A stretch of 64,000 bases of DNA from Camelus dromedarius (GCF_036321535.1 NC_087439.1:67890001-67954000), one strand, 5' to 3'. Counted from the stretch's first letter, positions 270-61,281 are shown. The notes: a model not told the origin generated them from the sequence alone. Program-made: numbers and translations.

Positions 270-311
270 GTGAGACCGCAGTGGGAGGAGGTGAGACTGC
301 AGTGGGAAGAG
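270..311 (+). repeat. 21-bp tandem duplication (2 copies, 2 mismatches)
   Basis: gtgagaccgcagtgggaggag / gtgagactgcagtgggaagag. Confidence 0.85.
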
Positions 312-319
312 GACCTTAC

Positions 320-21514: not shown

Positions 21515-21662
21515 NNNNNNNNNNNNNNNNNNNNNNNNNNNNNNNNNNNNNNNNNNNNNNNNNNNNNNNNNNNNNNNNNNNNNNNNNNNNNNNNNNNNNN
21601 NNNNNNNNNNNNNNNNNNNNNNNNNNNNNNNNNNNNNNNNNNNNNNNNNNNNNNNNNNNNNN
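21515..21662. other. Sequence gap (148 N) covering most of exon 4
   Basis: N run. Other gaps: 33024-33259, 37680-37819, 51542-51697, 53596-53754, 54756-55007. Confidence 0.99.
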
Positions 21663-21750
21663 TCCAGGTTGTGTGGGTACTTCTCGGGAAACCCCGGGGA
21701 CTCGATGGTCCCGTTGGGGCCTGTGAAGTTCTTTGAACAATCTTCCGAGC
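21520..21750 (-). CDS. NRP2: NRP2 exon 4 (CUB2 N-half, GSEDCSKNFTGPNGTIESPGFPEKYPHNL...), expected 231 nt; 3' 143 nt lie in an N gap
   Basis: Acceptor atatacag|GCTCGG at 21750; 88 nt are readable. The end at 21520 is inferred from the 231-nt length expected by homology to human; the donor itself is not visible. An alternative in-frame acceptor lies at 21768 (see findings). Confidence 0.85.
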
Positions 21751-21781
21751 CTGTATATAAAAGACAGCCTGTATATAAGAC
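21748..21781 (+). repeat. Tandem duplication (18 + 16 bp) spanning the exon 4 acceptor
   Basis: agcctgtatataaaagac / agcctgtatataagac. Confidence 0.9.
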
Positions 21782-24700
21782 AGAGGAAGAAGATGCCCTT
21801 CTCCGCTGCCTCTGTCGCATGGGTTATTTAAATATTTGGGCCCAAATCTCCCTACTCACGAAGTTTTTGTTTCCACTGGAGTGGCCCTTGAAGCAACATA
21901 CTTTTCACATCCACATTTCAAGCCCTTAAGCCAGATCATCTTTAGGAGAGAAATTAGGGGAGGCCAGTGGGCTTGCTCTACATATTAGAGTAAGAGCAGC
22001 AATTGAGGGTTTGGGAGGGGGCGGTGTAGAAAGAAGCGTGTGTGAGATACAGAGAGAGGGAGAGGGAGAGAGAGACTGATTCTCTTGAAAAGAGGAACAG
22101 AGTCCTCTTTCTCAATTACTCAGCTGCTTGCTCCAGAAATGTAAGTTATTTCAATCCTTAAGGAAGGCTTGCTGATTGCCAGCAGGGAAAACAATGTCAC
22201 CCCTTATTTATTGCTGACCTCAACACTAGCCCCTATTGTACCAGAGCCAACTCAGTGCCCCCGTCTCCCTCCAAGATCCAAGGTGCCTCAGGGGAGGGGC
22301 AAAGGCGAGCTCGGGTCTCATTCATGTCCTGACTATATTAAAACGAGCAGCTCTGTAGTGGCCAGACAATTAACAATTGAGGTTTGTAGCTGGTGGATCA
22401 CAGCAGGGTTTGGGGATGTTAAAGGCCGCTCCAGCAGCAAGTTTGGAAAAAATGTGGCAGTGCATTGACATGTGGAAGACTTCTGGTTCCTTTGCGGGGG
22501 GGGGGGGGGGCAGGGGAGCGGGTGGCCTTGTTTCTCTCCTCAGCTCTTGTGTCCGCTTTCTTGGGGCTCACGGAGGCACCTTATTAAATGCTGCACACAT
22601 TCACCTCCTGGTACAGGGTTGGACCACAGAGGGAACTCGTAAAAGGATTACAGCCAGCACATCTCCTAATGCCTCTAGGTGGAATCACACTGAAAGGACC
22701 CCCATGTGCTGTAACCCAGCTACCACTTGCCAGGGAGGGCCCTGGGACAGTCCTGCAGCCCAGACCACGGGCCCAAGAAGCTCCACAGAGTCAGAAGTTT
22801 CTCGAGTTAACACGATGAACGTAAAAGCTGCACAATTATAACTGATTGCACGATATGGTCTGATTTTAAAATTTGGAAAGGGAGCAGGATTTATAATAGG
22901 CCCTCCAAGCATGAAGCAGAAAACACAGAAATACTAGATAAACCAGGTGTTTACTGGCAGGAAGTGTCCTCTGGGGATCCCACTGAAATATAACTATGTG
23001 ATGTCAATACACTGATCTTCGCCCGCAGCGATGTCTTTATCCGCGGCTCCTGCAGCCGCCCCTCTGTGAGTCTCTTTATTGATGACGGCTTTCTGGAAAG
23101 CAGCAAAGGTCTGACTTGGAAAAGGTGCCATGCAAATAAGCGGGGGAGGGGGACTGCAACTTTCTTTAGCATCAGACGGGAAGTGCCAATATCCCTGCCC
23201 ACCGGGCAGGCCATCACCTCACCACCACCCTTCGCCCCAGCACTGTGCCTTGGCCAGGTGGGAACCCGGGACCCCTGGGATGAGAGCTAATCTTTTCAGA
23301 ATTCTTTGGAGGCTCTCTAATGCTGAATCCCAGAGGCGCTGCACTGCATCATGGGGGCAGGGCGGTCCAGGGGCAGCCAGGCCCGGAGGAGGAGTGGAGA
23401 CGACCCCTCCCCCGAGTTTGTTTACCACGGAGCCACCAGTTTTGTTTACCGTCAGGACTCCAGCTCCTGAGGGCCTCCTCAGTGATCCAGGATGAGGCCC
23501 TTTAGCAAAGCCAAGCCAGCTGGCAGGTCTTCAGGGGGCCGGGAGGAATTTTGAAAAGGTTAGTGTTTATAGCTGCTGGGCCACTTTGCCAGAGGAAATT
23601 AACTCTATTCACAAGTTGCTTCCAGAGCTAGAGGAGGCATCCGACATCCCCTCCTAGAGTTGGCTCTATTGTCATTCTCTCCCAAGGCGAGGGGAATCCC
23701 CACCCCCTCGGAGCAGGGAATTTATAGCGGAATCTTTCTTTAGTCCCTCTCACCCATGGGGGGACAGGTGCTTCCACAATGGACACTTTGAAAGCCCAAG
23801 AGAGGCCTGGAAAATGTGAAATTCTGAAGTACCCACAGTTTCCAAGGTTCTGTGGTTCTGGAATTGACTGGAGAGAATTTTTCAATTGGACGTCCTTAAA
23901 GGTAAAAAGGAGAAAAAAGTGTGTAACTATTTCTGATAAATGGCTAAACATGGGTGTATCTTGTGGCTTATTTTGAATCAGATAGAAAAACAGTTTGATC
24001 CTTTTTATGCAGAAAAATCAAGCCCGTCCATTACAATCACACTTCCGTCTCTAATTGTACCATCTCATTCTTTGTACAGTGTCACAAAGCAGTCAGCTGA
24101 GTATCAAACGTGGAGAAGAGATCTCAGAAAAGGGTGGCCAAGCCTGGGACAAGAGCGGAGTCTTGCAGATATCTACCTAATCCAAGATGCTTTTCTGCAA
24201 TGTGTTAAAAGGATTAAAGGTTAAAAAAATTAGCTCAGTCAACAAATACTCGAGTTAGTGCAACACTGAGATTGCCCATAGAAGCTGGGGGATTTCAGCC
24301 GCAGTGAATGATTTCATACCAAAGGACTCTGGTATGAAAAATGCCCACTCTGTGGTTTTCCACTGTAAATTTTACACCAACTCCACAAGCGGAAGAAGAA
24401 TCTGCATGCATAAGGCTATTGAAAACATGGTAGATTTATCCCGAGTTGAGCTGTGTCTGACCACAAAAGGTGAATCCAGTCCTTCAATATGGGAAGTGAG
24501 AGTAGGGGGCCCTGCAGAGTTTCTCCATCTGTAAATGACCCCAGAGATTTCTGTTTCCAAAATGTCACTGGGCACCAGGAAAGAAAACTTGATCTGGAAA
24601 CTTGGTCCAAAGACAATCAGAAAACAAACACACATACCAAATCCCCACATTTTTCAGTGATTCAGTTTCCAATGTTACTTTAAAAATTATTTTTAAATTC

Positions 24701-27553
24701 CTTTCTCTGTTCTGCTCATGATTTGGTGATTTGAGATTACTTAAGTCAGCGAGTTGTTTGGTTTGCCCTTTTAAATGTGGACAGTCTGGTCATACATAAA
24801 ATCTTTTATAAACCACTTCACTCAGGGCAGACGTGAACCTCCCTCTCCAGCCACTTGCCCCCATCTGTACCGAATTGTGGGTTTATTTCTGATGGTATAA
24901 TCATGCAGCAGAGCCCTGCCTGGGCGATGTGCTGTCGAAGGCTTCCAGAGCCCTCTGTACGGTTGCAGATCTGCATTTACAGTTCCCCCTTCTTTCTCTT
25001 TATGAATCTGACTAGCAAACATAGCTGTGTTTGTTTGCATTTCTTCAGCATGCTCATGTGTCTCTTTAATGTTCTGTGGATGATGTAACTTTGTGTATTT
25101 TTCTCTTAGGACTCCACCAGTAGAGATGCGGGTGCGGGACATGGCACCAGGAAGAAGGCTCATTTCCCTAAACACCTTTGTTTTGAATTCTGCCCGCGTG
25201 TGTCTGTGCTTTACTGAGGGGTGACTTTCATGTGAGAGTTGCTCTTTCTAAGGGGCATAATGGCAGGTGTGAATGGCGGCTCCGAGGCCACTAGGCTCTC
25301 CCTTTCTTACGTTCCCCAGAAGAAGGGCTGTTGCTGACGGAGCTGTGCTTATCTCCTACTGCAGGAATCTCTTTCTTCCTTGTAGGTAATCCCAGTCCTT
25401 AACGTAGACTGCCCCGCTTCTCCGTGCCCACGCCACCTTCCCTGGCTGGCTCTGTTGTTCCTAGGCAGTCCACAGACTTGCTGCCTTATTCAAAATCCTC
25501 CATCAGCTTCTCCTCAAAACAGCAATGCTGAGTGATGATATCCTCTTCTGTGTTTTATCTTTTAATATCGACTCTTCAAATCTGCCTGATGGATAGAGTT
25601 AACAACCACTTTTTTTGATGTCGACTTCTGGAAAATGTGGCATCATCTTCTGTGAAATACTAAATTGGGAAGCATGAAACAGAGATGAGCTTGAATGGTC
25701 CTGTTCACCCCTGTTCTGACTTCCAGTGGTCAGCTCAGCGGAAGACCTTGATTGGAGCAATTCTCCCCTCGTGGTCAGCAGAGTGGAGCCGAGTGGTGGC
25801 TTCAGCACTGGGGACCTTGCTGTCTAGCAGACTTCCCAGATCCCCCACTGGCCAAGCCACTTGGTTGCTTCCTGAGTTTCATAACCATAGCATGTTCATC
25901 GTGCTTCACACTTACGTGTTCTGCCTCATCTTAGAGTTTTCCTTTCAACTGACATATCTACTTACACATATTCATCCAACAGCATCCGCTGTGCATCCGT
26001 TATGTGCTGCGGGTTTGCACACCTGTCTCCCCCACCAGAAAAGGGCAAGCACCCTGTCTTATTCCCTTCTCTCTTCTCCCCACCGCGCCCCACCGGAGGA
26101 TGGTACGGTGAGTGGTCCATCAGTGCTGGGGGCTGTAACAAGTCTGAATCTTGCACAGGACTCGAGGGAGGGTGGATCAGGCCATTCAAGAGCCTCACAC
26201 TTGCCCTGAGCCACTGGACACACAGATTGTCAGTCCCTGTGACCTTCTGTCGTCAGGAGCATGACCCATGGCAGGTGGACCTTCCTGGGACTTGTGCCCT
26301 GGGATGGTCCTGGCTCCTGCCCTGGTCCCACCCTTTCATTGGATTCTGCGATCTGGTTCTCAGGCAGACAAACTGGGCAAATATTTAGACAGAGTGAATA
26401 TAAAAAGCGCTTTCAGCAGCAACCACTTCCTTTCGAGAATTGTTTGGCGAAAAAGAAAATATATATGAATAGTTCCCCTCACGCTGAACTCAAGAGGCGC
26501 CGGACTTGGGCCTCTTGATGACAAGGCTGACAGCCTCCCCTTTCAGCAGACTCCGCCCACGAGTTGTAAAACTTAGGCTGCCAGAGAGGGAGACACACTT
26601 GTAGACTGTAGATGGGGCGAGAGCCCCTGAGGTGGGGGGACGGGCGGCGGGTGAGGGGAGAACTGGAGGATAAGCTTCACCTGGCCTCAAGATCATGAGC
26701 TCACATATCGGAGGGAAGGGCAGACTGCTTGGAGTGATTTAGTGGAGATGCTGAAGCAGCGTCTTGTGAATGAAAGTTGTCTCTACCCAGTTATGGATAC
26801 TCAGCACTGGCCCATATTCTCAAGGTCTAAAGTAGTCTAAGGCGGACCTACTGGAAAGCAAGCAGCCAACTTAAAAGAAATGTAATGTTCTCTGCCTCTT
26901 TTCCTGCTCTCTTTTCCAGGGTGTCAATTTCATCGGCTTTAGGAAGGGGATTCAATGGGTAGTCACGGCACAGAGGATCAGCAAGGGGAATTTCCAGGAG
27001 CTGTATCTGAATATAAAAGCTACTACATGACCCCACTGGTGGTGGTGGGATGGGGGTGAGGGTCATAGTAAGATTTTTAGAGACTCCAAGACTGAATAGA
27101 TTATGTCCTTCTGCCCCATGTAATTCCAAAGGCTATATTAAACCATGAAGTAATTAGGAGGAAGCGCAACCAAGTTTTGTTTTTACCATGAAGATTACTG
27201 TGATTTTTTTTAAATACACACAAAAGTCAAATTCTTTCCAAAGGGTTTTTCTATTTAATAGGTGCCCCTACTCTTTTGCTGCCACAAACACTCAAGCATT
27301 AACCCAGCAACTTGCCCTCTTATGTTGGCTGGTAACCTAAACTGGGTTCATCTCAGGCTGTCTCCAATTTCACTTGAACCCCTCTTTCCTCCCTCAACTT
27401 GCTTATCGGGTTGGATAAAACTAGAACCCTTACCACCTGTGTCCACCCACTGGGCTCCATTTGTGGGCACATAACTATGACGCAGGTCCCTCATCCAGTG
27501 CCCCACGGCCAGACACGGAGTCCCATCTTCTCTCCCCCCATGACCACACTGAC

Positions 27554-27735
27554 CTGTCTTGAATATCTCATAGCGCAGGGAGAAGCCTGCCCCCTGCCGG
27601 GCGTAGTCGGAGGTGAACTTGATGTAGAGGACAGAGCCGGAGGAGATAATAGTGGGTGGGGCGATGTTCCCACAGTGCTTTCCCAGGAGGTCTGCGGATT
27701 CGCTGTCCCCATCCCGAATCTCAATGAAGTCATAC
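27554..27735 (-). CDS. NRP2: NRP2 exon 3 (CUB1 C-half, YDFIEIRDGDSESADLLGKHCG...YEIFKT), 182 nt
   Basis: Acceptor cacctag|GTATGAC, donor ACAG|GTCAGT. Confidence 0.97.
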
Positions 27736-32835: not shown

Positions 32836-33544
32836 GCCCTGAGGTTGGTGTTATATATTGAGAAGAAGGAACTCTGCTTTCTGAGGGGTTTGATACGTTT
32901 GGTCCATTTTATTGTCTGCCTTTGTGCTCCAGCAAGCTCACTGAGCTATTCTGGTTGTATCTGGAAACCAAAATGTTGCCTCATGACTCAAAAACACGAA
33001 ATATACCATTTTGAGTGGAAGAANNNNNNNNNNNNNNNNNNNNNNNNNNNNNNNNNNNNNNNNNNNNNNNNNNNNNNNNNNNNNNNNNNNNNNNNNNNNN
33101 NNNNNNNNNNNNNNNNNNNNNNNNNNNNNNNNNNNNNNNNNNNNNNNNNNNNNNNNNNNNNNNNNNNNNNNNNNNNNNNNNNNNNNNNNNNNNNNNNNNN
33201 NNNNNNNNNNNNNNNNNNNNNNNNNNNNNNNNNNNNNNNNNNNNNNNNNNNNNNNNNNNCAGGAGGAGAAAACAACACTGTCATGTATGACTGCCCAACA
33301 AAGAAGCTGCCTGAGACCCCAAGAGGCTGTGAGGCAGGTCTGCACAATGCTGAAGTCTCTGGACAGTTCAGGCCCAAAGCAAGGTGGCCTGGTCTGTGGC
33401 TCAGTAGGGACATTCAGCTTTTATGGAGAAATCAGCTTGCTGTCAGTTCAGGTTTTTTAAGAAGTCAATTTCATTTCCTTGAATCTCTCCCTTTCATTGG
33501 TATCACGCGTTTAGTAAGAAGCTGGGACATCAGTGGGAAAAGCT

Positions 33545-35480: not shown

Positions 35481-38184
35481 TGTAGATGAACTTTCAGAGA
35501 ATCAAGGGCACACAACAAAGCCTGCGCCACTTCTCCCCTGACCTTCTGGCTCCACACCACTCCCTCCACTGACCAGCTCCCCAGCAAGCATGTTCCTCGG
35601 GCCGTGTGGCCACACATCTGCTCTGCTCCTGGACCAGCAAGTACTCTGGAGGTCGGCTTGGATGGAATGTGTTTGCTTATGTAAGGAATGATTTTCGAGA
35701 CATGTGAAGTTTTAAGGCTTTGGGGCAGGCTGTTTTCAGCATGACTGTTGGGTGTTACTTTCTGTCTATGCATCTATAAAATCCTCACTCTCCCAAGTCA
35801 GCTTAAATGACCCCTTGCTCATATTTTGTAATAATATCAGAGTAAAAAGTAGAAAAGAGTAGCGTACAATTTATGCCCATTCACCAGTAGCCTGGTGCTG
35901 AGATGGGAAGGCGAATCCCAGCAGGATCAGAGACTTGCTGAATTGTCCTAAGCTGGCCTAGGTCAACCGAGCATGCCTCAGTTTGCCTCATCTCATAAAT
36001 AGGTACAGGGATCATGGCTCTGTGCCTCTCAGGGCTGACCAGAAGGGGCAGAAAGTATCTGGAACCCACTGAGGGGGAATCATTGTACAGCATTTCTGGG
36101 CCTGGTGTGCTGGCAGTGTACCTGAACCTGGCCGGGTGAATGGTTCCCTCTGGGACATCGCTCACGAATCCTTGCTCCCAGAGGGTCTAATTGTAAGAGT
36201 GAATCATAACCTTCCCATCTGTCCGAAAAATGGAAGCCTGCTGGGAACGATGTGTGCTGGGCACCAGGGAATCAATCACCACATCAAAAAAGTCCTTTAT
36301 GTTTTTTTTCCCCCCAGGGACGAAGGTTCCCAATCATTTTTCTCTCCACCTTTGCTGGTATCCAGCCTCCATAACAAAAGTCCAAAAATACAAAACTTGT
36401 CTGAAAAACATGCCATGTGGAAATCCAAGCAGGGGGCAGTTTGGGGAGAAGGTAGCAGAGGTGATGGGCCCTGTCCTCACATTTCATGCATCCGGAGCTT
36501 CAGGTGACAGAGCTCAGGGCTTCTCCTTGGCTCCAGGGGCTAACTTGTCACTCCTGTGCAAAAAGCACAGTCGTGTGGAAATGACGGGCCAGCACTAATG
36601 TTCAAGCAGGAAGGGACTGTGGCCACGCCAGGGTGGAGATTCTGAATGTAGCACTTGGTGGCCAGTCAGCTGGAACTGCTCCCACCTCCCAAACCGCCAC
36701 TGGGTAAGTGGCTTGCTTAGATGGCTGTGTTCTGAAGGCACTGTGGCTGTGAGGGCCAAAGCAGGTCTGTTCACACAGTGCACATGAAAGCCCCCGCCTT
36801 TCCCCATCACAGGAAAGTCCCTCTGTTCTGAAAGACCTGGCTGCCCCTTGTGCAGGTTCAGGATGATGGGTGTTCTTGGCTGCAGGTTCTGTAAGACCAG
36901 GAAGAAATCTGTCTAGAAAGGACACCAGCTTCTACGAGAAAGGGAACCAGGTTGCAGGAAGCCTCCTCACAGGACGGAAGCAGTGTGTGTCAGACCTTGA
37001 AGAACTTTTATTTATCCCACAGCCAGAGCAGGCTGTTGGCTTTGTGCATGGCTGGCTGGTGGGATGGCTACCATCTTGCAGTGGCCAGCGGGGCCCTCAC
37101 CGCTTGGGGAGGCAGCGTCGGTGGCCAGGACGAGCTGTGGGGCCACATGAGGGTAAGGGCCCTTGTGGGCAGTAGCGACCCCCCAGAAGAGAAGTCAGAA
37201 CCCCAACACTTAACCTCGCAGCCTGTCCTGAGGCTTGGACTAAATCATGTATCTGCTTGGACTTCAGTTTCCTTCCCATGGCAGGAAGACCAAAACAACA
37301 ATAATAAAAAATAATAATACTATCTTACCCTCCTACGGCTCTCCAAGGGATGACACATCGATAAATCACTTTGAACTTTTAGATGAAAGGTGCTCTAGAA
37401 AACCGAGGGCTCATCAACTGTAATTGTTACGGTAATCATTTTAATGATAATAATGATGATAATGGGGGGTGGGGGGGGTGAAACCTCCTACCTTGAGACA
37501 AAGGAAAACTCCCGTTAAAACCTGCAGCACAGATTGTTCCCGCTCCTAGCTCTCAACCGTCTCTTTCCAACTGCCAGTTCCTGGGCTGAAATATTTACTC
37601 CTTTCCTTTCCAATAAAACAATTATTTGTTCCACCATTTTCTCTCTCGCTCACTCGCTGGTGCATCTGGCTTTGCCCTGNNNNNNNNNNNNNNNNNNNNN
37701 NNNNNNNNNNNNNNNNNNNNNNNNNNNNNNNNNNNNNNNNNNNNNNNNNNNNNNNNNNNNNNNNNNNNNNNNNNNNNNNNNNNNNNNNNNNNNNNNNNNN
37801 NNNNNNNNNNNNNNNNNNNTCTTCGGATTCCAGATGAAGAGTAAGGTGGTGGCGGGGATGGCAGGGAATTTGAAGAGGATGCTGACGGGGGCTGGAGGGG
37901 ACCAGAGGAGTAGGAGGTAGGTGACAGGGAGGCAGGAGACAATTGACTGAGAGGCAGGCCTCCAGCTTGTATTTAAAGACACAGAAAGATCTCTCTGTCT
38001 CTCTCCTTGACTGCCCTGTCGGCATCCAGAGGTGACCACACGGCAGGAAGAGGCAAAGAAAAGGTAGAAAAAAGAGAAAAGAAAAAAAGAAAAGAGTTGT
38101 CAAGGATATCTAAGGAAATCAGAGAGGCCTCAAATGCCTAAGCCTTGGGACAGCAGATGACAGCTCTGAGCATATGGACACAGG

Positions 38185-42617: not shown

Positions 42618-45289
42618 TGATTCTGGTTTGACTTGAGCCTCCTGGAGGGGGTGGGGTGCCCGGCCTGTGTGAGGATGCGTGAAGAAGCTGTGTATCATAC
42701 GCAGGTGGGTGTTTTCAAGAATACATATTCTGAGATCTCAGAAATGGAAAACGTATTCGAGTGCATGTGCATACATTTCTGAAGCCCTAATGTTCAGTGG
42801 CTTGATGACCCGAGTGAAAGGCAGGGACAGGAGCCTCTCCCCACCGCAGGGGATGACGTGGCTTCTCCCCTGGTGCTCAGATGGCCCTGAGTCCTGCCCT
42901 TTTGCCCCTCAGCCGCACGGACTGGGCAAGGCCACGGAGGCTTCTGGTTTCTGTTCAAAGTCGGGGAAGAGGCCCCAGAGCAGCCTATGGGCGCTGGGGG
43001 CTTGGATGCCTGTGGATGGCCAGAGGGAGGAGTCGGGAGCTCACCGCAGATGGTGGCCTTGGATGGCAGACTCAGGCAAAGCTGGGGCTGGTGAGTGAAA
43101 GTTTCCAAGCAGACAGCAAGCTTAAATGAAATGAAATTAACCAGCAACGGTTAGGGGAAAAGGTCGGTCTGTCTGGGGTTTATTCATCAACGGCCTCCAC
43201 CTTTGGGATGTGGATTTCAAGGGACAGAGAGCCAAGGGCTTAGGGACCACTGGCCAATCTGATCCTCTCACATCCGGGCCCATTCCCAGGTCATGGGGCC
43301 ATCTCTGCAGTAAATCCTGCACAAAGGAAGAAGAGGGGAAAACACGAGGGCAAGGCTGGGCCTGCTGACCACTGCCCTTACTCCAGAGTGGGGCTGCGTT
43401 GTTGTTTTTTTACCCCCTGTTTTCACTCCCTTTTTGCAGGGGTGTTGCTGCTGCATTCTCTCATCAGAAGGACTGTTTGGGAAGTTTTGGTAAGTATCCA
43501 CCCTATGGGCTTTGAGAGCCAAATCCAATTTGAAACATGCACCCGAAATGACAGTTGGAAGAATACTAATTTCCTTTGCTAGTAAGTTCTTTCCCAACCC
43601 AGGAGCTCCCTTGGAACGAAAAGGAGAGCGGGAGAGAGGAGCAATAGGACAGAACTTCCAGGACTTCAATTAGATTAATTGTTCCCTTCACAAGACAGTC
43701 AAACAAGGCAGAGGGAGGAGGAAGAAGCCCGTTTACTCTGAATGCACATGGCAAGGAAGATGTTAAAAATACCTTGCAGGGTGAGAGATGGAGGGAACCG
43801 GATGTGCCTTTCCAAGTACAAAAATTAATCAGAGTAAGAGAGAAATGGGGAGTAGGGGAGAAAGGGCGGAGGCAGAGAGCAGTAGGGATGAGGTTAAGTA
43901 GTGGAGGCTTGACCCCAACAGAGCCTTTCTGACGCTTTGGCACTGGGGGAAGGAGACCCCAGGAAGACTTTTTTCTGACCTTCCTGAACTTTTCAGTTCC
44001 AGCTGAAAGTATGGAATGGAGGAGTGGGGAGAAAAACAGAAAGCTACTTAGTAAGGATGGTAAACTCGAGTAGCTTCAGAATAACCTGGAACTTGCCTGC
44101 TTCCCCTCCTCCAACTCCAGCCAGAGGCAACGTCTTTGTCCCTCTGCCACCAGCGGGCTTCGGAGGCCTTGTGATGGCCCCATCCCTGGGGCTCAGCCCC
44201 CAACGGTGCAGGAGCGTGCTGCCCTGGCCTTTCTTGCTTCCTGACATATTTTAAGCCATGCTCACCAGCTCCTGAGTGTTCCGTTCCAAAAGCCTTGCCT
44301 TCTCTCTCTGCCACTATGAATATACATGAGCTGACCTCTTAGCAATTCCCCTGGGAGATTTGCAGGCATAAGCATAACAGATTTTGGCCCTCAGTGGAGA
44401 GAGGTGCTTAGTCAAATTTCTCCGAGCTCAGACCTAAGCTCTCGGTACATTACACCTCAATTTGTGCCAACCGGCCAGACAGCAGGAGCCTTATACCTTA
44501 TACAGATGCTCTTTGAACATAAATTTTTGGTAAAGTTCACTGGCAGGGAACTGGCAGCCTTGAGTGCAAATGTGCAAATGTGCACTGGCTGTGCATTTAA
44601 CTCATTCAAAGAGGAACTGATGAGTTACCCCATGTCCTCCATTGAGTCAGAACTGGATCTTGGATTAAAAACTCTATCTTATGACTGTCACATGAAGGGT
44701 TCATCTGGGAAACCGTTCGGTTTTCAAGAAAGACAACCTCTGGTTAGGAAAAAGTCATTACAAAGGTGCAAAGGAGTCCTAGGAGGGTACCGATGACACT
44801 GACCCCCCTATGCCTGGCAGTCTAGCACTAGTTAAAGAGGACCCTGTGTCCTCCACAAGGCAGCGCTGGCCCAGATCTGGCCCCCCTCCCCGGCCGGCTG
44901 TCCCCTGTATTAACTTTTCAGTCCTCACAATGCCTTGGTCACGAAGAATGCTTGACTATTTATGAATCATAAGGGGCCATGGAATACCCATCAGAGCAGT
45001 GGCATGTTCTAGGCACGTGTTTGGAGAAGGACAGGATTGTTGGCATGTTCTTTCCTGCATGGAAAACTCTCACTTTTGTTTTAGTGACGAAAGACTCTAA
45101 GATGGAGCCCACCGGACAGCACAAAGGGCATTCACGTTCTTGACGTTACAATGCTGCTTCCTCCCTCACCTTGACGGCAGGGACCTTGGTGTTAACAGGG
45201 CATTTCTAAAGCACTCGCAGGCGTCTAAACACCCACTGGGTCTCTCCTAAGCTAGACATTTCAAAGGTGGCAGGACTGATGTTGTGGGC

Positions 45290-49200: not shown

Positions 49201-50512
49201 AGGGAGGTTGACCCTGTGAAGTTGCAGCTATTGAGCCTGTTTGGCAAGTCGGCAAGGGACTTCTTTCTTTAACTATTTTGTGAATACCTTTCACCTGGGG
49301 CAAACTTGTTTTCCAAAGAGAAGTAGGCAAATCCAGGCCTGGACTGTTCAGAGCAGTTTTCTCTTACATCTGGGAGGGAAGCCTATGGGATGGGCCAGGT
49401 CAGGCCAGATAAAGACCTCAGAGGCCCAGGGATGAAAGGATGCAAGTGATCCCCAGATGTAATTTGAAATCAAGGGAATACTAAGTTCTAAAGTCACGAA
49501 GGTCTGATTTTCTTTCCCCCCTGCAATGACTACTAAGGTGTTTTTATTTGACACATCAAAGGTCAGATTATTTCTGACATCCATATCTTCCTCTTTGTCT
49601 CTCTCTTTGTTTGTCTCTGGTGCCCTTGTTGGCTGATGACCTAAGTACCATCTGATGCTGCCTGGGGGTAACCTGGCCCTGGATCAGATACAGGGATTTT
49701 GTACCCATTGACTTACAATTCTAAGGCACTCTGCCAGCTTCAGAAGGAACTCAGCCTCCTACAGAACCCAATTTAAGATGAAGCACTGGTTCCTCAGTAA
49801 TATTTTATTTTTAGGACATATTTATTAAGGATTAAAAGAAGATCTTTTAAAAAAATCTGGTCTGTTTCCTAGGGAAATTCACTTGGATTTGTTTTAAAGG
49901 AACACTGTACAGCCAAGACTTTTAAATAATCAGATTACAGTGGCTTACTTCACGATGGCCACCAGAGACGCCAGTGACACCAGGCAACAGCCTGCGGGCT
50001 GTCCCACAGTAGAATAATCAGATCACTTGGTTTAGCTGAACTGAAGGAAAAAGTCCTTGGCAAAAACGGGGGAATTTAGGCTGGCTGGATTTGGGATTAG
50101 TGAGTCAGATTGTTGTCAAAGGTGGGTCTGGGGTGAGGGGACCAGATTACTAGGAGGGGAGGGGGGCTGACATTAGCAAGAAGAGGGGAGGCAGCACGTG
50201 GATGCTTAACTCCGTGTGACCTTCCTCGACTGTAATTCTGTGAGGGGGCTGAATGAAGTGTGTCGTTTTCAAAGTTCTTTTTAAAGGTGTTTGTTGTTTT
50301 CCTTGACCAAAACTCTATGCAGAACTCCAATGTGCAAAGCAGCTAAGAGTGGAGCTCTTCTTGGGTGTAGGGATGGGGGGAACCAGAATCAGTACAGTGT
50401 CTCTGTCTCCAAGTCCCCCCACCAAGGGGGCTTCTCTGTAAGAATACTGGGGCTTCTTGGAACAGAGTCTGAAACCCACTGAACTGATCTCAGTTCCCTT
50501 GTTACTTTAAAA

Positions 50513-51060: not shown

Positions 51061-52329
51061 AGCCTATACAATGAGGAGGAGAAAAGATCCTCTAACCCAT
51101 AGATGAACCCCAAATTAAAAAGATTCTCTACCCTTCTAGACAATAAGATATTTACACAAGGTGTTAATTCCTGTTTCATCTGCTTGGTAAGCCTGAAATA
51201 AAACTCCGGGATTCTTCGAATGAACCTATCTGTCTTACATTATGGAGAGTTCAAATGTCTCTTTCAATCACGTTAGCTCTACTGACATGAGCTTCTTTTC
51301 TTAACTGAGTGTGTGGCTACATATTTATAAACATTAGGGATACACAGTTCTGTGTGTGAGCATCTCAATGACAGTGATGCATGAAAGGAAAGGCCAAAAA
51401 TCAAAAAAAGAGTTTCTTCTAATCTCTTGCTCAAATCATCTAAGTCCTGTGCTCAGGGTTGGAACCAAATTTTGCTCACCAACCCTGGATAAGCTGCTTT
51501 TTAAGAGCGATTTCTCTGAGCTGAGGTTGGATTTTGTTTTANNNNNNNNNNNNNNNNNNNNNNNNNNNNNNNNNNNNNNNNNNNNNNNNNNNNNNNNNNN
51601 NNNNNNNNNNNNNNNNNNNNNNNNNNNNNNNNNNNNNNNNNNNNNNNNNNNNNNNNNNNNNNNNNNNNNNNNNNNNNNNNNNNNNNNNNNNNNNNNNGCT
51701 GGGTGGCAGTGAGTGATACACTCCTGAAGGCACAGCAAATGGAAATCCCTGTGAACTTCTGCAGTGATAAAGTTCAAAATCTGAATAAAAGAACCATCTG
51801 AGAGGGCAGGAAGGAGAGAAACCAGAGAGCAGGAGAGGAAGCCAGTGCCTGAGCGTGGAAAAAGGAGTAAAGAATGAGGCAAACTTCCTCTTCTAAAACA
51901 CCTCCAACGAATTCACCAGGGAGAGAACTGGAAATTGGGTCTGGAAATAGGGCCTTTGGAAACTCTCTCTCCCTCAATCTGGATTCTAAAAATGAACCTT
52001 CATCTAATCGTTAAAATGTACATTTGATGTGATTACCTCCCCTGACCTCGAATCATGCCACCTGTGGTAACCTTGTTATTTGTCATCTTATATCATAAAC
52101 AAATGCAATTCCAATAGGGCAGCCAATATAATATCATTAGTTTATATTTATGTCCACTCTTTCCCAGCCCTCATTGCAAATGCAATTTTGATGCCATTGA
52201 TGAGAGATCTGAGATTACAATTCTTGACCATTTCAACAGACATTTGGGGAAGGAAATAGAAGAAGAATAATTTTAAGGTCTCTCAAAAAGGTAATATAAT
52301 TTTTTTTCATTTATTTTGATTAACTGAAG

Positions 52330-52800: not shown

Positions 52801-54214
52801 TCATTAGGGTAATACCAAAAGCATCAGTAGGTATCACAAATTCTAAGAAAGAAAGCTTTGTCACAAATTGTTCTGTTTATCCAGCTACTACCATTCCTTC
52901 CCAATCCACAGCTGCTGTGAAATGCAAATGTTTTTTCTGGTGAACCGAGAATTCAGATACCTTGTCTGGGTTCCTAATACCTAGTCATAGGTCAAGGTGG
53001 AGCTAGCGTGAGCTCTGTCTCGTGGGACACAGTAACCTTGTGTAATAACAATGGAGTTCAAAGGATATTACATTTTAATTCTAATAATAGTAAAATTAAT
53101 TTAGCTGAGGGTTTTCTTGCCCCCTCACTCCACACGCTCCCCACCCCTGGCCCCGCTGCCACTCACCCTGCCAAAGGCAAGTTCTAGGGATTTGTTTTCA
53201 GTCAGTAGCACCAGGAAGATTCAAAGTATTGCTTCATCACCAAACTGTTTGCCGGGAACAGATTATCTCTTCCTGGGTTTCCATTCACTCCTCTCTACCC
53301 ATCCCTCCCCAATTTGCCTTCCTCCCTTCCTATGCCCCCAATTTGCCTTTTAGGCACATCTGTTTTATTTTTCCCCTTTATCAAAGCAATGATTGCTGCC
53401 GCTTGGTCCAGTAATTTGCAATTCCCTTTATCTTCTTCGCTGAAAGACTGGCCAGAACCCGGATCACTGGCTATCACGGGATCTGGAGAGGCGGTGAGCA
53501 GGGTATCACTGGCCGTGTGCATTAAGGGGGCCAGCCCCATCCACTGCCCGCTTTCCTTCTGTTATTCCCAGCCTCCTCCCTTTTTTCCTGGATTANNNNN
53601 NNNNNNNNNNNNNNNNNNNNNNNNNNNNNNNNNNNNNNNNNNNNNNNNNNNNNNNNNNNNNNNNNNNNNNNNNNNNNNNNNNNNNNNNNNNNNNNNNNNN
53701 NNNNNNNNNNNNNNNNNNNNNNNNNNNNNNNNNNNNNNNNNNNNNNNNNNNNNNCCACGCAGCGTTCCCTGCTGAGCACACTTTCAGGGATGAAGGATGG
53801 AAGAGGAGGAAGGGGAAGAAAAGGAGAGAGATTTAAAAAATCAGTAGAGGCGAGAACTGAAAGTGGAAGACCAAGGTGAGAAAAAAAATGCAAAGAGATG
53901 TAAATCTAAGATGAGACTTCTCCAGCAGAGAGCATCCCCTCTGAAGAACAGTGTGCCGAGAGCTAATCTGACGCTTATAAAACCAGACAAAGGTTTAGTG
54001 GGGTAAGAGCTGAGAATGAGTAATTATTTACTTATTAAAAAACTCATACAAATAACATAAACTTATCACAAGGGTGTTAGAGTGTGCTTTCGACCATTCT
54101 ATGATCACCAGATACTGTGAACCCTACTGAAGCTGTTTGGAAGATTAAATGACTTCTGAATAGATGGCTTAATGTGTCCTGAACAGTACTGTGTCATCTC
54201 ATGTGGCACAACCA

Positions 54215-54345: not shown

Positions 54346-56729
54346 CTTCGGAAGCTGGGAAGGCCAATGAAGGTCTCCCCCCAAACTTTTCGGTGACAGA
54401 ATTTAGTGGCATGGAGGGAAAGATAAATGTTTGGCCTGTTTGAGAACTCCGTTTTCTCTCCCGGTGCGAGGAATCCGTGTGTGAACAATGAGAGATGTGT
54501 CTGAGGCTGGGGTGTGAGTGGGCTGAAAGCACTTAACACCTTTTCCACTCCCAGTACACAGGCACTGGGGTCCTTGTCATCCTGGCCCTCCTCCCTGCGT
54601 TCTGGAAACCAGGGTGTGCATTTGGGGGAGGGTGTAGGGGGTGTGAACAGGGTGTTCAAGTCTGAAACTATGTGTCACAACATCCGAGGGCTTCTTCTTG
54701 GCTCCTCATTGCCATTCTTCCCCATCCTAAATGCCACAGTTTTGTTGTTCTACTGNNNNNNNNNNNNNNNNNNNNNNNNNNNNNNNNNNNNNNNNNNNNN
54801 NNNNNNNNNNNNNNNNNNNNNNNNNNNNNNNNNNNNNNNNNNNNNNNNNNNNNNNNNNNNNNNNNNNNNNNNNNNNNNNNNNNNNNNNNNNNNNNNNNNN
54901 NNNNNNNNNNNNNNNNNNNNNNNNNNNNNNNNNNNNNNNNNNNNNNNNNNNNNNNNNNNNNNNNNNNNNNNNNNNNNNNNNNNNNNNNNNNNNNNNNNNN
55001 NNNNNNNTCCTGTTAGCTAATGAGCGCATTAAGCCCTTCAGCAGTTTCTCATCAAGGCAGATAAAACTTTGAAAAAGGCTGTAGGCTCCCCAGCACAAAC
55101 TTCTGCAATATCTTCCAGGAATGGGTTAATAAAAAAAAAAAAAAGTAAATTTCTTACCTGGAAGGAACCATACAAAGACTCACTTCTGGGGATCAAACAC
55201 AAGTCTGCCACTCAAGAAGGGTGCCTCAAAGATTATTCAGTGGCAAATGATGGCCAGACGATAAAATATCTCGTATATGTTAATGATACTACAAACTACT
55301 ACCCAGATGCCACTTTTCAAGCCCTTTCTCGTCAGTGCAAGAAATTAAAAAGTTATCATGCCTCTGCTCCATCTTTTATAAAAGGAAAGTCTCATCTCTG
55401 TTTCCTAAAGTCTTTCCAAACTAAACCTTTGGGGAATATATTCTGAAAATTCTTTTCCAGTGAACCTGGCTCTGAATTCTGTTAATTTTGTTAACAAGTG
55501 TGCCCCATACTCGGGTCACCCAAAGTCAGCTCATTCTCTTGACTGATTTAATGAACAGTTGAGTGAAAAGAAAAACACCAGGCAGGGTCCTCAGAACCAT
55601 CGAGTCCACGGTGTCTCTCCCACTGACCCCCAGGGGCCTCTCCCCAACTGTTATTTGCTTTCATGCCTCATTGCATATGAATTGGCATTTGGACTCCAAG
55701 CCATGTCTACAGCGGGAAGATAGGAACTGGCCTTTCGATTGCAGCATGTGAACTATATATTGAACAGCAGGAGATGAGAGCCATTTGGTAGACAGCAGGA
55801 GTCCTGGCTGGATAGCCCGGGGTTCTAGGCACTGCAGCCTTCCAACATTTCATTTTGCCAGTTGGGTGCTCTGTGGCTTAATCTGAGGGCTCCACAGCAT
55901 GACATGAAAGTCCAGACCTGCAGCGCTGCCTGGGCATTCACAATTCTACCAGGCACAACTTGGACAAGAAGGGGCTTGCCCTGCAGCCCTCCTTGGGAGC
56001 GCTCCACTTTCCACTGTTTTGCACTGTGTGCTCCGTTGGCAACTGGCCCCAGCTTCACCACCTCCAGTGGCTGCTTATGGGGTAAAGTTGACTGGGTACC
56101 CACTATATGCGGGGACGAGACCAGTCCCCAGAGCCTAGAGCAGGCTGTCTGTGCAGAATCCAGGAGTTTATAGCTCTGCTTGCAAATATTTATGCCTACC
56201 CACAGCCATCCTGCAATCTGGAGAGACAGGCTAAAAAAGCAAGCCTCTTCAAACTCTTATCCAGCGCCTAGCCTGTCCTGTCTTCTCTTTCAGGATTTGT
56301 TTGAACCTAGACCTCTCCCCCACAGCCAATTTAACACCTCTTATCTGATCATCCAGTCCAGACGAAAGGTTGAATTGACCGTGTCTGCCAGTGTCCATGG
56401 CAATGGTGTTAAAACCCAAGTACAGATCAAAGCTCTACAGGCAAGGGGCGAGGGGTGGGAGGTCGTTGGTTACAGGGTCCGGATTCTTTTGGCCCCAAGC
56501 GGTGTGTGCCGGAGGTGGGGAAACATTAGTTAGGGCTGGGAGTTGCCGCTATCTTTAGAAACCCACTGTAAGGGCCTGAATTATTTCCTAGCAAAACCCA
56601 GTTCCCCGCGGACCACGAGTAAGTCCAGCAAAGGAGAGTTTCTGACCGGGAATGGCTAGCGCCAGGGGGCTCTCCTCTCTGTCTAAAACCGAAAGGAAGG
56701 GAGGCGGAGGGAGGGAGAGGAGCCTCAGC

Positions 56730-60309: not shown

Positions 60310-61121
60310 TTTGGAGGTTGTTTTCTCCAGAGATGTTTTTGTAGATTTCTGGTATAATTATGTCTTTGTATTTTTCTCTTTCTTATATTCTTCCTTACAG
60401 TGTCCTCTGTAAAGGTTTCTACTGGTCAATGTTTCCCTCCTGGATCCTGGCGGCCCGTCTTCACCTTTATTCTTGCCGGATCCCCACCTCACCGGGAGGG
60501 TAGCTCTTGAAATCAGCAAAGAGGGAGCAAGCTGGGAAGACAGGACGGGTTTCCTCTCTTTAAAAAAAGCATCTATGTCCTCTCCAGTTCCTCAAAGTAT
60601 CATTTCCTTTATCCTACAACATCACGGATGTTTCCCNNNNNNNNNNNNNNNNNNNNNNNNNNNNNNNNNNNNNNNNNNNNNNNNNNNNNNNNNNNNNNNN
60701 NNNNNNNNNNNNNNNNNNNNNNNNNNNNNNNNNNNNNNNNNNNNNNNNNNNNNNNNNNNNNNNNNNCGACACGCGGGCGGAGGCACCCACTGCCGGACGG
60801 CCCGAGTGGGAGGCAGCCGCCCAGCTCTTGCCCTCGCCGGGTNNNNNNNNNNNNNNNNNNNNNNNNNNNNNNNNNNNNNNNNNNNNNNNNNNNNNNNNNN
60901 NNNNNNNNNNNNNNNNNNNNNNNNNNNNNNNNNNNNNNNNNNNNNNNNNNNNNNNNNNNNNNNNNNNNNNNNNNNNNNNNNNNNNNNNNNNNNNNNNNNN
61001 NNNNNNNNNNNNNNNNNNNNNNNNNNNNNCCTCCACCTCGCCCAGCGCCTCGCCGAGTGTCTGCGCGTCTGAGGATGTGCTGGGGGCGGGCTGCGGGCTG
61101 GTTCCTCGCTCGCGTTCTCTG
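60310..61121 (-). other. NRP2: NRP2 exon 1 5'UTR (about 810 nt, two gaps)
   Basis: The readable segments (cagagaacgcgagcgaggaaccagccc..., acccggcgagggcaagagc..., aaaggaaatgatactttgagg...) resemble the human NRP2 mRNA leader as recalled. The TSS position is approximate. Confidence 0.7.
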
Positions 61122-61281
61122 CTTCCCCTCCGGNNNNNNNNNNNNNNNNNNNNNNNNNNNNNNNNNNNNNNNNNNNNNNNNNNNNNNNNNNNNNNNNNNN
61201 NNNNNNNNNNNNNNNNNNNNNNNNNNNNNNNNNNNNNNNNNNNNNNNNNNNNNNNNNNNNNNNNNNNNNNNNNNNNNNNNN
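60637..61281. other. Three sequence gaps in the 5'UTR/promoter (60637-60766, 60843-61029, 61134-61281)
   Basis: N runs interleaved with short GC-rich segments. Confidence 0.99.

What the first reader, a model, noticed from the sequence alone, without database searches (positions are those of the whole stretch)
21748..21790. Duplicated exon 4 acceptor could insert six residues, including a Cys, between CUB1 and CUB2
Seen on the transcript strand: catcttcttcctctgtcttatatacAG|gctgtcttttatatacAG|GCTCGGAAGAT. A tandem duplication gives two near-identical 3' splice sites exactly 18 nt apart. The upstream AG (exon start 21768) carries the longer pyrimidine tract. Using it keeps frame and changes KT-GSEDC to KT-GCLLYT-GSEDC. 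The copies differ by a 2-nt indel, which argues against a simple assembly stutter. Established: the spliceosome tends to use the first suitable AG after the branch point; CUB1/CUB2 mediate semaphorin-3 binding; NRP2 CUB1 is the Lujo virus receptor surface; the a2 region contributes to binding of the HCMV pentamer. Inference: this lineage may express an NRP2 with a longer a1-a2 linker and an unpaired extracellular cysteine.
Basis: partly seen in the sequence, partly recalled or inferred. Interest (0 to 1): 0.7.

Follow-up and report, generated by a model that had tools for sequence, protein, structure and literature searches.

The report
Second in-frame acceptor AG in NRP2
The neuropilin-2 gene of this animal really has two look-alike splice acceptor sites 18 bases apart before exon 4. 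The upstream one sits only 6-7 bases after the conserved branch-point motif, so it is probably skipped, and no reads could be laid to show that the six-residue insert is ever made.

Summary
Observation confirmed. On the minus strand, two near-identical 18-nt units each end in ACAG|G (AGs at 21770-69 and 21752-51). Using the upstream AG keeps the frame and turns KT-GSEDC into KT-GCLLYT-GSEDC, with no stop.

It is not an assembly stutter. Fourteen DNA runs from two coded organisms hold every sampled word of the stretch.

It is also not a net 18-nt insertion. Whale, pangolin, bat and galago align colinearly with about the same length. In this lineage the stretch just upstream was overwritten by a copy of the acceptor: 8 of 19 columns are window-specific there, against 12 of 115 elsewhere (P=0.002).

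All five species keep a branch-point-like heptamer, TCTT(A/G)A(T/C), 25-27 nt before the canonical AG. The new AG lies 6-7 nt after that A, inside the zone where AGs are normally bypassed. Downstream of the conserved AG cluster, the upstream AG has no TNA branch-point candidate at a usable distance. Pangolin carries its own out-of-frame AG at the same spot, yet its annotated protein is normal.

All ~175 NRP2 proteins that cover the junction, coelacanth to mammals, have KT|GSEDC with no insert; no protein of this lineage was visible.

Best reading, about 0.6: the canonical AG stays the main site and the insert is at most a minor isoform. Interest is modest.

The parts
27554..27735 (-). NRP2 exon 3, the C-terminal half of CUB1; it ends ...EIFKT plus the first base of the Gly codon
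   Evidence: One search gives the sequence, with acceptor cctag|G at 27735 and donor G 27554|gt. Pfam CUB E=1.5e-12, profile positions 56-110 of 110. One search finds NRP2 (P0113) with the peptide matching residues 85-144.
27552..27553 (-). GT of the intron 3 donor (ACAG|gtcagt)
21797..21816 (-). Purine-rich cluster holding five AG dinucleotides, conserved in five mammals. It marks the 5' limit of the AG-free zone, so a working branch point must lie downstream of it.
   Evidence: One search lists the AGs; searches give the alignments.
21777..21796 (-). It lies upstream of the branch-point-like heptamer and is conserved in the other mammals.
21775..21781 (-). Branch-point-like heptamer GTCTTAT with a TNA core and its A at 21776. 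It is orthologous to TCTTAAT (whale, pangolin, bat) and TCTTGAC (galago). The A is 25 nt before the canonical AG and 6-7 nt before the new AG.
   Evidence: One search gives the distances; in alignment A3 the T..A is invariant. The motif definition nnyTrAy is from PMC8531310. No branch point was mapped.
21768..21785 (-). Upstream repeat copy CTCTGTCTTATATACAGG with the new AG at 21770-21769. It holds the window-specific overwritten patch: about 21767-21774, a 1-nt deletion, and G 21781.
   Evidence: 8 of 19 columns are window-specific. Seven of those eight changes make this copy equal to the downstream copy (read by eye from the alignment).
21751..21768 (-). The 18 nt that would become coding (G-CLLYT-G) if the upstream AG were used. 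Otherwise they are the last 18 nt of intron 3, ending in the canonical AG at 21752-21751.
   Evidence: in-frame, no stop.
21663..21750 (-). Visible part of exon 4, the start of CUB2: GSEDCSKNFTGPNGTIESPGFPEKYPHNL. The rest, 21515-21662, is masked N and was left so.
   Evidence: The orthologous exons are in L001, L002, L003 and L005.

Best explanation
This is the intron 3 / exon 4 boundary of neuropilin-2. After this lineage split from whales, a short templated mutation overwrote the intron stretch between the branch-point motif and the polypyrimidine tract. The event could have been a conversion-like template switch, or a duplication with an equal-sized loss. The overwriting sequence was a copy of the acceptor itself (...ATATACAG|GC). 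This produced two near-identical 18-nt units and a second AG, in frame, 18 nt upstream, with no change in intron length. The new AG lies only 6-7 nt downstream of the conserved branch-point-like A at 21776, which is 25 nt from the canonical AG. Downstream of the conserved AG cluster, no other TNA-type branch-point candidate lies at a usable distance from the new AG. The spliceosome therefore most likely bypasses it in step 2 and keeps joining exon 3 to 21750, giving the normal KT|GSEDC. Use of 21768 (+GCLLYT) would then be at most a minor product. Shown here: the sequence anatomy, the frame, presence in many DNA runs, colinearity with four outgroups, clustering of lineage-specific changes toward the downstream copy, and conservation of the heptamer. 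Inferred: that the heptamer is the branch point, and that the AG is bypassed.
For: Anatomy and frame. No net insertion: blastn spans of 210 nt in the window against 211 (whale), 213 (pangolin), 206 (bat) and 204 (galago), and the MAFFT alignments A2 and A3 show no 18-nt gap. Templated overwrite: 8 of 19 window-specific columns in the upstream copy against 12 of 115 elsewhere, Fisher P=0.0017. The changed bases reproduce the downstream copy, including that copy's own lineage-specific G and T (read by eye). In the outgroups the two halves resemble each other only weakly (shuffle P 0.03-0.17). Branch point: TCTT(A/G)A(T/C) is conserved in 5 species at 25-27 nt from the AG. It fits nnyTrAy and the usual 18-37 nt distance (PMC8531310). 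It is the only TNA motif between the conserved AG cluster and the acceptors. Bypass: AGs within 12-15 nt after a branch point can be bypassed, and genome-wide the zone appears to be about 7-8 nt (PMC2991248; PMC1431707). Natural precedent: pangolin has an AG 8 nt after the same heptamer, 19 nt upstream and out of frame, yet its annotated protein P0287 reads KT|GSEDC. Constraint: every NRP2 protein that covers the junction (120 cluster representatives and 59 of the 62 further sequences, about 175 distinct proteins) has KTGS[ED]DC with no insertion.
Against: The branch point is predicted, not mapped. The overwrite removed the purine at heptamer position 5 (TTAAT became CTTAT), which may weaken it and favour other branch sites. 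A distance of 6-7 nt is at the very edge of the bypass zone. In human NF1, new AGs at -4 to -21 are often used as the 3' splice site or cause exon skipping (PMC7317903). The 18-nt in-frame spacing would let selection tolerate use of the upstream AG.
Confidence: 0.6

Rival explanations
1. The upstream AG is a working acceptor, used in a substantial share or the majority of transcripts. The animal then makes NRP2 with a six-residue GCLLYT insert, including an unpaired Cys, in the a1-a2 linker.
For: Both AGs have the same ACAG|GCT context, and the upstream one follows a 20-nt pyrimidine-rich run. The spacing is in frame with no stop. The spliceosome prefers the first AG after the branch point, and AGs created at -19 to -21 in NF1 introns are used (PMC7317903). 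The conserved heptamer lost its position-5 purine in this lineage.
Against: The only candidates at a usable distance (12 nt or more) from this AG and downstream of the conserved AG cluster are non-TNA, for example GGGCATC at 21794. About 90% of predicted branch points are TNA. The pyrimidine run is conserved in species that have no AG after it, so it is not evidence of a new site. Pangolin tolerates an out-of-frame AG at the same place. The linker length is invariant in all ~175 NRP2 proteins that cover the junction. RNA runs X43 and X44 hold 0.20 of the words, nearer the 0.215 expected for canonical splicing than the 0.28 for the extended exon. That likelihood ratio is only about 1.8 and carries almost no weight.
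Confidence: 0.28
2. The new AG disturbs early 3' splice-site recognition. This would cause partial skipping of exon 4 or use of a cryptic exonic AG (such as 21743-42), as seen for many AG-creating mutations in the AG-exclusion zone.
For: In NF1, 24 of 49 AGEZ-interrupting variants cause exon skipping (PMC7317903). The heptamer is slightly weakened.
Against: The allele is present in every DNA run listed, from two coded organisms, so it is not strongly harmful. NRP2 is highly constrained. There is no transcript data either way.
Confidence: 0.08
3. An assembly or sequencing artefact: a stutter in an AT-rich stretch.
For: The region is low in complexity (TATATA), and the copies are short.
Against: All 30 sampled words are held by 14 DNA runs of 8 samples, 5 studies and 2 organisms, and 28 of 30 by two RNA runs. 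P=0.004 that no word touches the patch. The total length equals that of the outgroups, whereas a stutter would add length. The locus is single-copy in the assembly.
Confidence: 0.02

Closest known systems
Tandem alternative 3' splice sites (NAGNAG and wider in-frame tandem acceptors)
   Same: Two AGs at the end of one intron, both with C at -3 and G at +1. The spacing is a multiple of three, so either choice keeps the frame.
   Different: The spacing is 18 nt rather than 3-12. Use of both sites is not shown. The upstream AG lies next to the presumed branch point rather than downstream of a shared pyrimidine tract.
AG-creating mutations inside the AG-exclusion zone (NF1 series, PMC7317903)
   Same: A new AG appears about 19-20 nt upstream of an authentic acceptor. 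In NF1 such AGs are often used as the splice site or cause exon skipping.
   Different: Here the change is apparently fixed in a wild lineage, is in frame, and sits 6-7 nt after the conserved branch-point motif. That places it in the branch-proximal part of the zone.
Branch-point-proximal AGs that are bypassed (region r3 of Corvelo et al. 2010, PMC2991248; Gooding et al. 2006, PMC1431707)
   Same: An AG less than 12-15 nt after a TNA branch-point motif, observed genome-wide up to 7-8 nt, with the real acceptor about 25 nt from the branch point.
   Different: The branch point is not mapped here, and the distance is at the edge of the observed zone.
Known NRP2 isoforms (a0/a17/a22, b0/b5, soluble s9) - from my own knowledge, not tested here
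   Same: The same gene; alternative splicing of NRP2 is well documented.
   Different: The known variants change the membrane-proximal and cytoplasmic part or truncate after b2. None alters the a1-a2 (CUB1-CUB2) linker, which was invariant in every protein seen here that covers it.
Clustered templated mutations (template switching or short-patch conversion between nearby similar sequences) - my own knowledge
   Same: A cluster of substitutions plus a 1-nt indel, all matching a sequence 18 nt away, with no net change in length.
   Different: The mechanism is inferred from the pattern only. A duplication followed by an equal-sized deletion is not excluded.

Membership tests
Neuropilin-2 gene, exon 3 / exon 4 (CUB1-CUB2 boundary) | The exon 3 product is the C-terminal half of a CUB domain and matches NRP2 | tested here: met
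   Pfam CUB E=1.5e-12. The peptide matches residues 85-144 of NRP2 P0113. The exon 3 and exon 4 motifs SSGSVLYIKF, FSLRYEIFKT and GSEDCSKNFT occur in mammalian NRP2 proteins.
Neuropilin-2 gene, exon 3 / exon 4 (CUB1-CUB2 boundary) | Colinear with the NRP2 loci of other mammals at this intron-exon boundary | tested here: met
   83-89% identity over 210 nt to annotated NRP2 loci L001, L002, L003 and L005.
Tandem alternative 3' splice sites | Two AGs with acceptor-like context a short, in-frame distance apart | tested here: met
   ACAG|GCT occurs twice, 18 nt apart, with no stop.
Tandem alternative 3' splice sites | Both junctions are seen in transcripts | not testable with these tools
No protein of this lineage was visible in the protein collection. 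A metagenome scan for either junction found nothing.
Tandem alternative 3' splice sites | A branch point at a usable distance upstream of the proximal AG | tested here: inconclusive
   Between the conserved AG cluster and the upstream AG, the only TNA motif is 6-7 nt away. The remaining candidates are non-TNA. This is prediction only.
Simple tandem duplication (net insertion) | The locus is longer than its orthologues by one repeat unit | tested here: not met
   The length matches whale within 1 nt (1 nt shorter), is 3 nt shorter than pangolin, 4 nt longer than bat and 6 nt longer than galago. No 18-nt gap appears in A2 or A3.
Simple tandem duplication (net insertion) | Adjacent copies far more alike than chance | tested here: met
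   TRF score 56. None of 2000 shuffles reached the observed score.
Branch-proximal bypassed AG | A conserved nnyTrAy or TNA heptamer 18-37 nt before the authentic AG | tested here: met
   TCTT(A/G)A(T/C) in five species, 25-27 nt before the AG. The motif and distance are taken from PMC8531310. Met at sequence level only.
Branch-proximal bypassed AG | The extra AG lies within the bypass distance of the branch A | tested here: met
   A 21776 to AG 21770-69 is 6-7 nt. The literature zone is under 12-15 nt, observed at 7-8 nt (PMC2991248).
Branch-proximal bypassed AG | The extra AG is not used in splicing | not testable with these tools
   No reads could be laid.

The most novel reading that the evidence does not exclude
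In this lineage the upstream AG is the main, or a tissue-regulated, acceptor. Much of its NRP2 would then carry GCLLYT, with a free cysteine seven residues before the first CUB2 disulfide cysteine, in a linker whose length is otherwise invariant from coelacanth to mammals. That could change a1-a2 geometry, disulfide pairing or dimerisation, and ligand binding.
Probability: 0.12. Interest if true: 0.5.

Novelty: new member of a known kind. Interest (0 to 1): 0.25.

Why it matters
If the upstream AG were used, a strongly conserved receptor (semaphorin-3F and VEGF-C co-receptor; its CUB domains also bind viral glycoproteins) would carry a lineage-specific linker insert with an unpaired cysteine. 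That would be worth a biochemical look.

As it stands, the locus is mainly a tidy natural example of two other things. One is how a short templated mutation can plant a perfect copy of an acceptor inside the AG-free zone. The other is how the position of an AG relative to the branch point, rather than the strength of the pyrimidine tract, probably decides whether it matters. It also warns against reading 'tandem duplication' from one genome alone: the outgroups show that no length was added.

Tried and rejected
Locus L004, which the tool made, spans that place and was not used.

3. I looked for an annotated or Logan-derived NRP2 protein carrying the insert. The steps were an exon-3 peptide search, then P0113, two homologue searches and cluster members. 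No protein has CLLY or LLYTG. No protein of this lineage (marker FTGPNG) is visible, because such proteins are hidden inside 90% clusters. This says nothing about this lineage's own transcripts.

4. I left the third homologue search unused. Fragments are absorbed into full-length clusters, so it could not expose them. A query running across the masked N stretch would have amounted to looking up masked letters.

5. The metagenome scan for either spliced junction gave 0 hits.

6. Six encoding-contig requests gave no DNA. Pig, musk deer, dolphin and golden mole were not the longest products on record; badger and colugo have genes longer than 100 kb. An earlier colugo request was not sent because the service was busy.

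7. The word share of RNA runs X43 and X44 (0.20) against expectations gives a likelihood ratio of about 1.8, too weak to use.

8. RNA folding of the acceptor region pairs the purine cluster with the pyrimidine run, but z is -1.48, not significant.

9. MaxEntScan and SpliceAI are not available.

10. The idea of an older repeat already present in the ancestor was rejected as unsupported (shuffle P 0.03-0.17 in the outgroups).

Full report
**What is there**

On the minus strand the end of the intron reads catcttcttcctctgtcttatatacAG|gctgtcttttatatacAG|GCTCGGAAGAT. The AGs are at 21770-69 and 21752-51, so the exon would start at 21768 or 21750, 18 nt apart. TRF reports an 18-nt period, 2.1 copies and 90% matches. 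The repeat finder gives two 18-nt copies.

The upstream exon runs from 27735 to 27554 and ends AAG ACA G|gtcagt. Its product is the C-terminal half of a CUB domain (Pfam E=1.5e-12). It matches residues 85-144 of neuropilin-2. Joining 27554 to 21750 gives KT-GSEDC. Joining it to 21768 gives KT-GCLLYT-GSEDC, with no stop. The rest of exon 4 (21515-21662) is masked N, and I left it so.

**Is it real DNA?**

Fourteen DNA runs hold all 30 sampled 31-mers of 21663-21962. They come from 8 samples, 5 studies and two coded organisms, A and C. Two RNA runs hold 28 of the 30 words. If the words were sampled at random, the chance that none touches the repeat patch is 0.004. The locus is single-copy in the 2.31-Gb assembly. 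Some of those runs may be the source of the assembly, but eight samples cannot all be. An assembly stutter is very unlikely.

**It is not a net duplication**

I fetched annotated NRP2 loci from four other mammals:
- giant pangolin (L001)
- gray whale (L002)
- a vespertilionid bat (L003)
- a galago (L005)

The 210 nt ending at 21663 align colinearly with 211, 213, 206 and 204 nt in whale, pangolin, bat and galago, at 89, 83, 83 and 85% identity. The whale is the closest, which fits an artiodactyl. The multiple alignments have no 18-nt gap (A2, A3).

Where the window has CTTATATACAGGCTGTC, the other Laurasiatheria have CTTAATGCTA(Y)GGTTCTC. Changes specific to the window cluster in the upstream copy: 8 of 19 columns, against 12 of 115 elsewhere (Fisher P=0.0017). 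Reading the alignment by eye, seven of those eight changes make the upstream copy identical to the downstream one. They include that copy's own lineage-specific G (CTC to CTG) and T (ACATAC to ATATAC).

In the outgroups the two halves are barely more alike than shuffles (P 0.03-0.17). The simplest account is one templated event after the split from whales. It overwrote about 10-18 nt of intron with a copy of the acceptor (ATATACAG|GC). The '2-nt indel' between the copies is then probably the retained ancestral TCTTA, not a later deletion. A duplication followed by an equal-sized loss is not excluded.

**Which AG is used?**

This could not be measured. What remains is anatomy and comparison.

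1. *A cluster of five AGs limits where the branch point can be.* The cluster (21816-21797) is conserved in all five species. Their annotated proteins use the canonical junction. A working branch point must therefore lie downstream of the cluster.

2. *Only one TNA-type motif lies in that interval.* It is TCTTAAT in whale, pangolin and bat, TCTTGAC in galago and GTCTTAT in the window. Its T and A are invariant, and it sits 25 nt (27 in pangolin) before the canonical AG. This fits the mammalian heptamer nnyTrAy and the usual 18-37 nt distance. About 90% of predicted branch points are TNA (PMC8531310).

3. *The new AG starts 6 nt after that A, and its G is 7 nt after it.* AGs within 12-15 nt after a branch point can be bypassed, probably for steric reasons. 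Genome-wide, the bypass zone looks like 7-8 nt (PMC2991248; PMC1431707).

4. *Pangolin gives a natural precedent.* It has its own AG 8 nt after the heptamer, 19 nt upstream of exon 4 and out of frame. Its annotated protein is still normal.

5. *The 'longer pyrimidine tract' is not evidence for a new site.* It lies upstream of the heptamer and is equally present in species with no AG after it.

Several points cut the other way:
- The overwrite removed the purine at heptamer position 5.
- A distance of 6-7 nt is at the very edge of the bypass zone.
- The two AGs have identical -8..+3 contexts.
- In human NF1, new AGs at -4 to -21 are often used, or cause exon skipping (PMC7317903).

My odds are as follows:

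| Outcome | Probability |
|---|---|
| Canonical AG is the main site | about 0.6 |
| Appreciable or dominant use of the upstream AG | about 0.28 |
| Skipping or cryptic effects | about 0.08 |
| Artefact | about 0.02 |

**Protein context**

Every NRP2 protein I could see that covers the junction has the linker ...RYE(I/L)(F/Y/H)(K/N)T|GS(E/D)DC... with no length change. That covers 120 cluster representatives and 59 of the 62 further sequences, about 175 distinct proteins from coelacanth to mammals. The other three lacked the motif. None of these proteins is from the window's lineage; its marker FTGPNG occurs only in a caecilian protein. This shows constraint on the linker, not what this animal expresses.

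In the numbering of P0174 the insert would fall between T144 and G145. The new Cys would sit seven residues before C149, the first cysteine of CUB2. Solved structures of NRP2 a1a2b1b2 and of NRP2 in larger complexes exist (2qqk, 7m22, 6gh8). I know them as the semaphorin/VEGF receptor fragment, the HCMV pentamer complex and the Lujo GP1-CUB1 complex, but their titles were not shown to me. Altered sequences cannot be folded with the tools here.

**Comparison and verdict**

The feature belongs to known kinds. It is a candidate in-frame tandem acceptor and, more likely, a branch-proximal AG that is bypassed, created by a short templated mutation. It fails the test for a simple tandem duplication because there is no extra length. 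Whether it is a true alternative acceptor was not testable. It is a new instance rather than a new kind, and interest is modest unless junction reads show real use of 21768.

Noticed in passing
window 21719-21721 (-): Codon GGC gives Gly in KNFT-G-PNGT, right after the N-F-T sequon at the start of CUB2. Every eutherian NRP2 protein seen that covers the site has Ser here, and whale, pangolin, bat and galago DNA has AGC. It is a lineage-specific change at a site invariant in the eutherians seen.
   Followed up: partly
L001:25695-25696 (pangolin): Pangolin has its own AG 19 nt upstream of NRP2 exon 4 (exon start L001:25716). It is out of frame and 8 nt after the conserved TCTTAAT heptamer, yet the annotated protein P0287 has the normal junction.
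   Followed up: partly
window 21797-21816 (-) and 21777-21796 (-): A purine-rich cluster with five AGs is conserved in five mammals. It is predicted to pair with the pyrimidine run that follows it, in a hairpin of -21.8 kcal/mol. With z=-1.48 this is not significant, and covariation was not examined.
   Followed up: partly
window 21515-21662 and eight other N runs (33024-33259, 37680-37819, 51542-51697, 53596-53754, 54756-55007, 60637-60766, 60843-61029, 61134-61281): Nine masked stretches of 130-252 nt. The one at 21515-21662 covers the rest of exon 4. They were left unfilled.
   Followed up: no
window 270-312, 43832-43879, 49723-49766: Other two-copy mini tandem repeats of period 18-21 with TRF scores 53-72. 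Small duplications of this size occur about once per 10 kb in this window.
   Followed up: no
I did not examine it.
   Followed up: no
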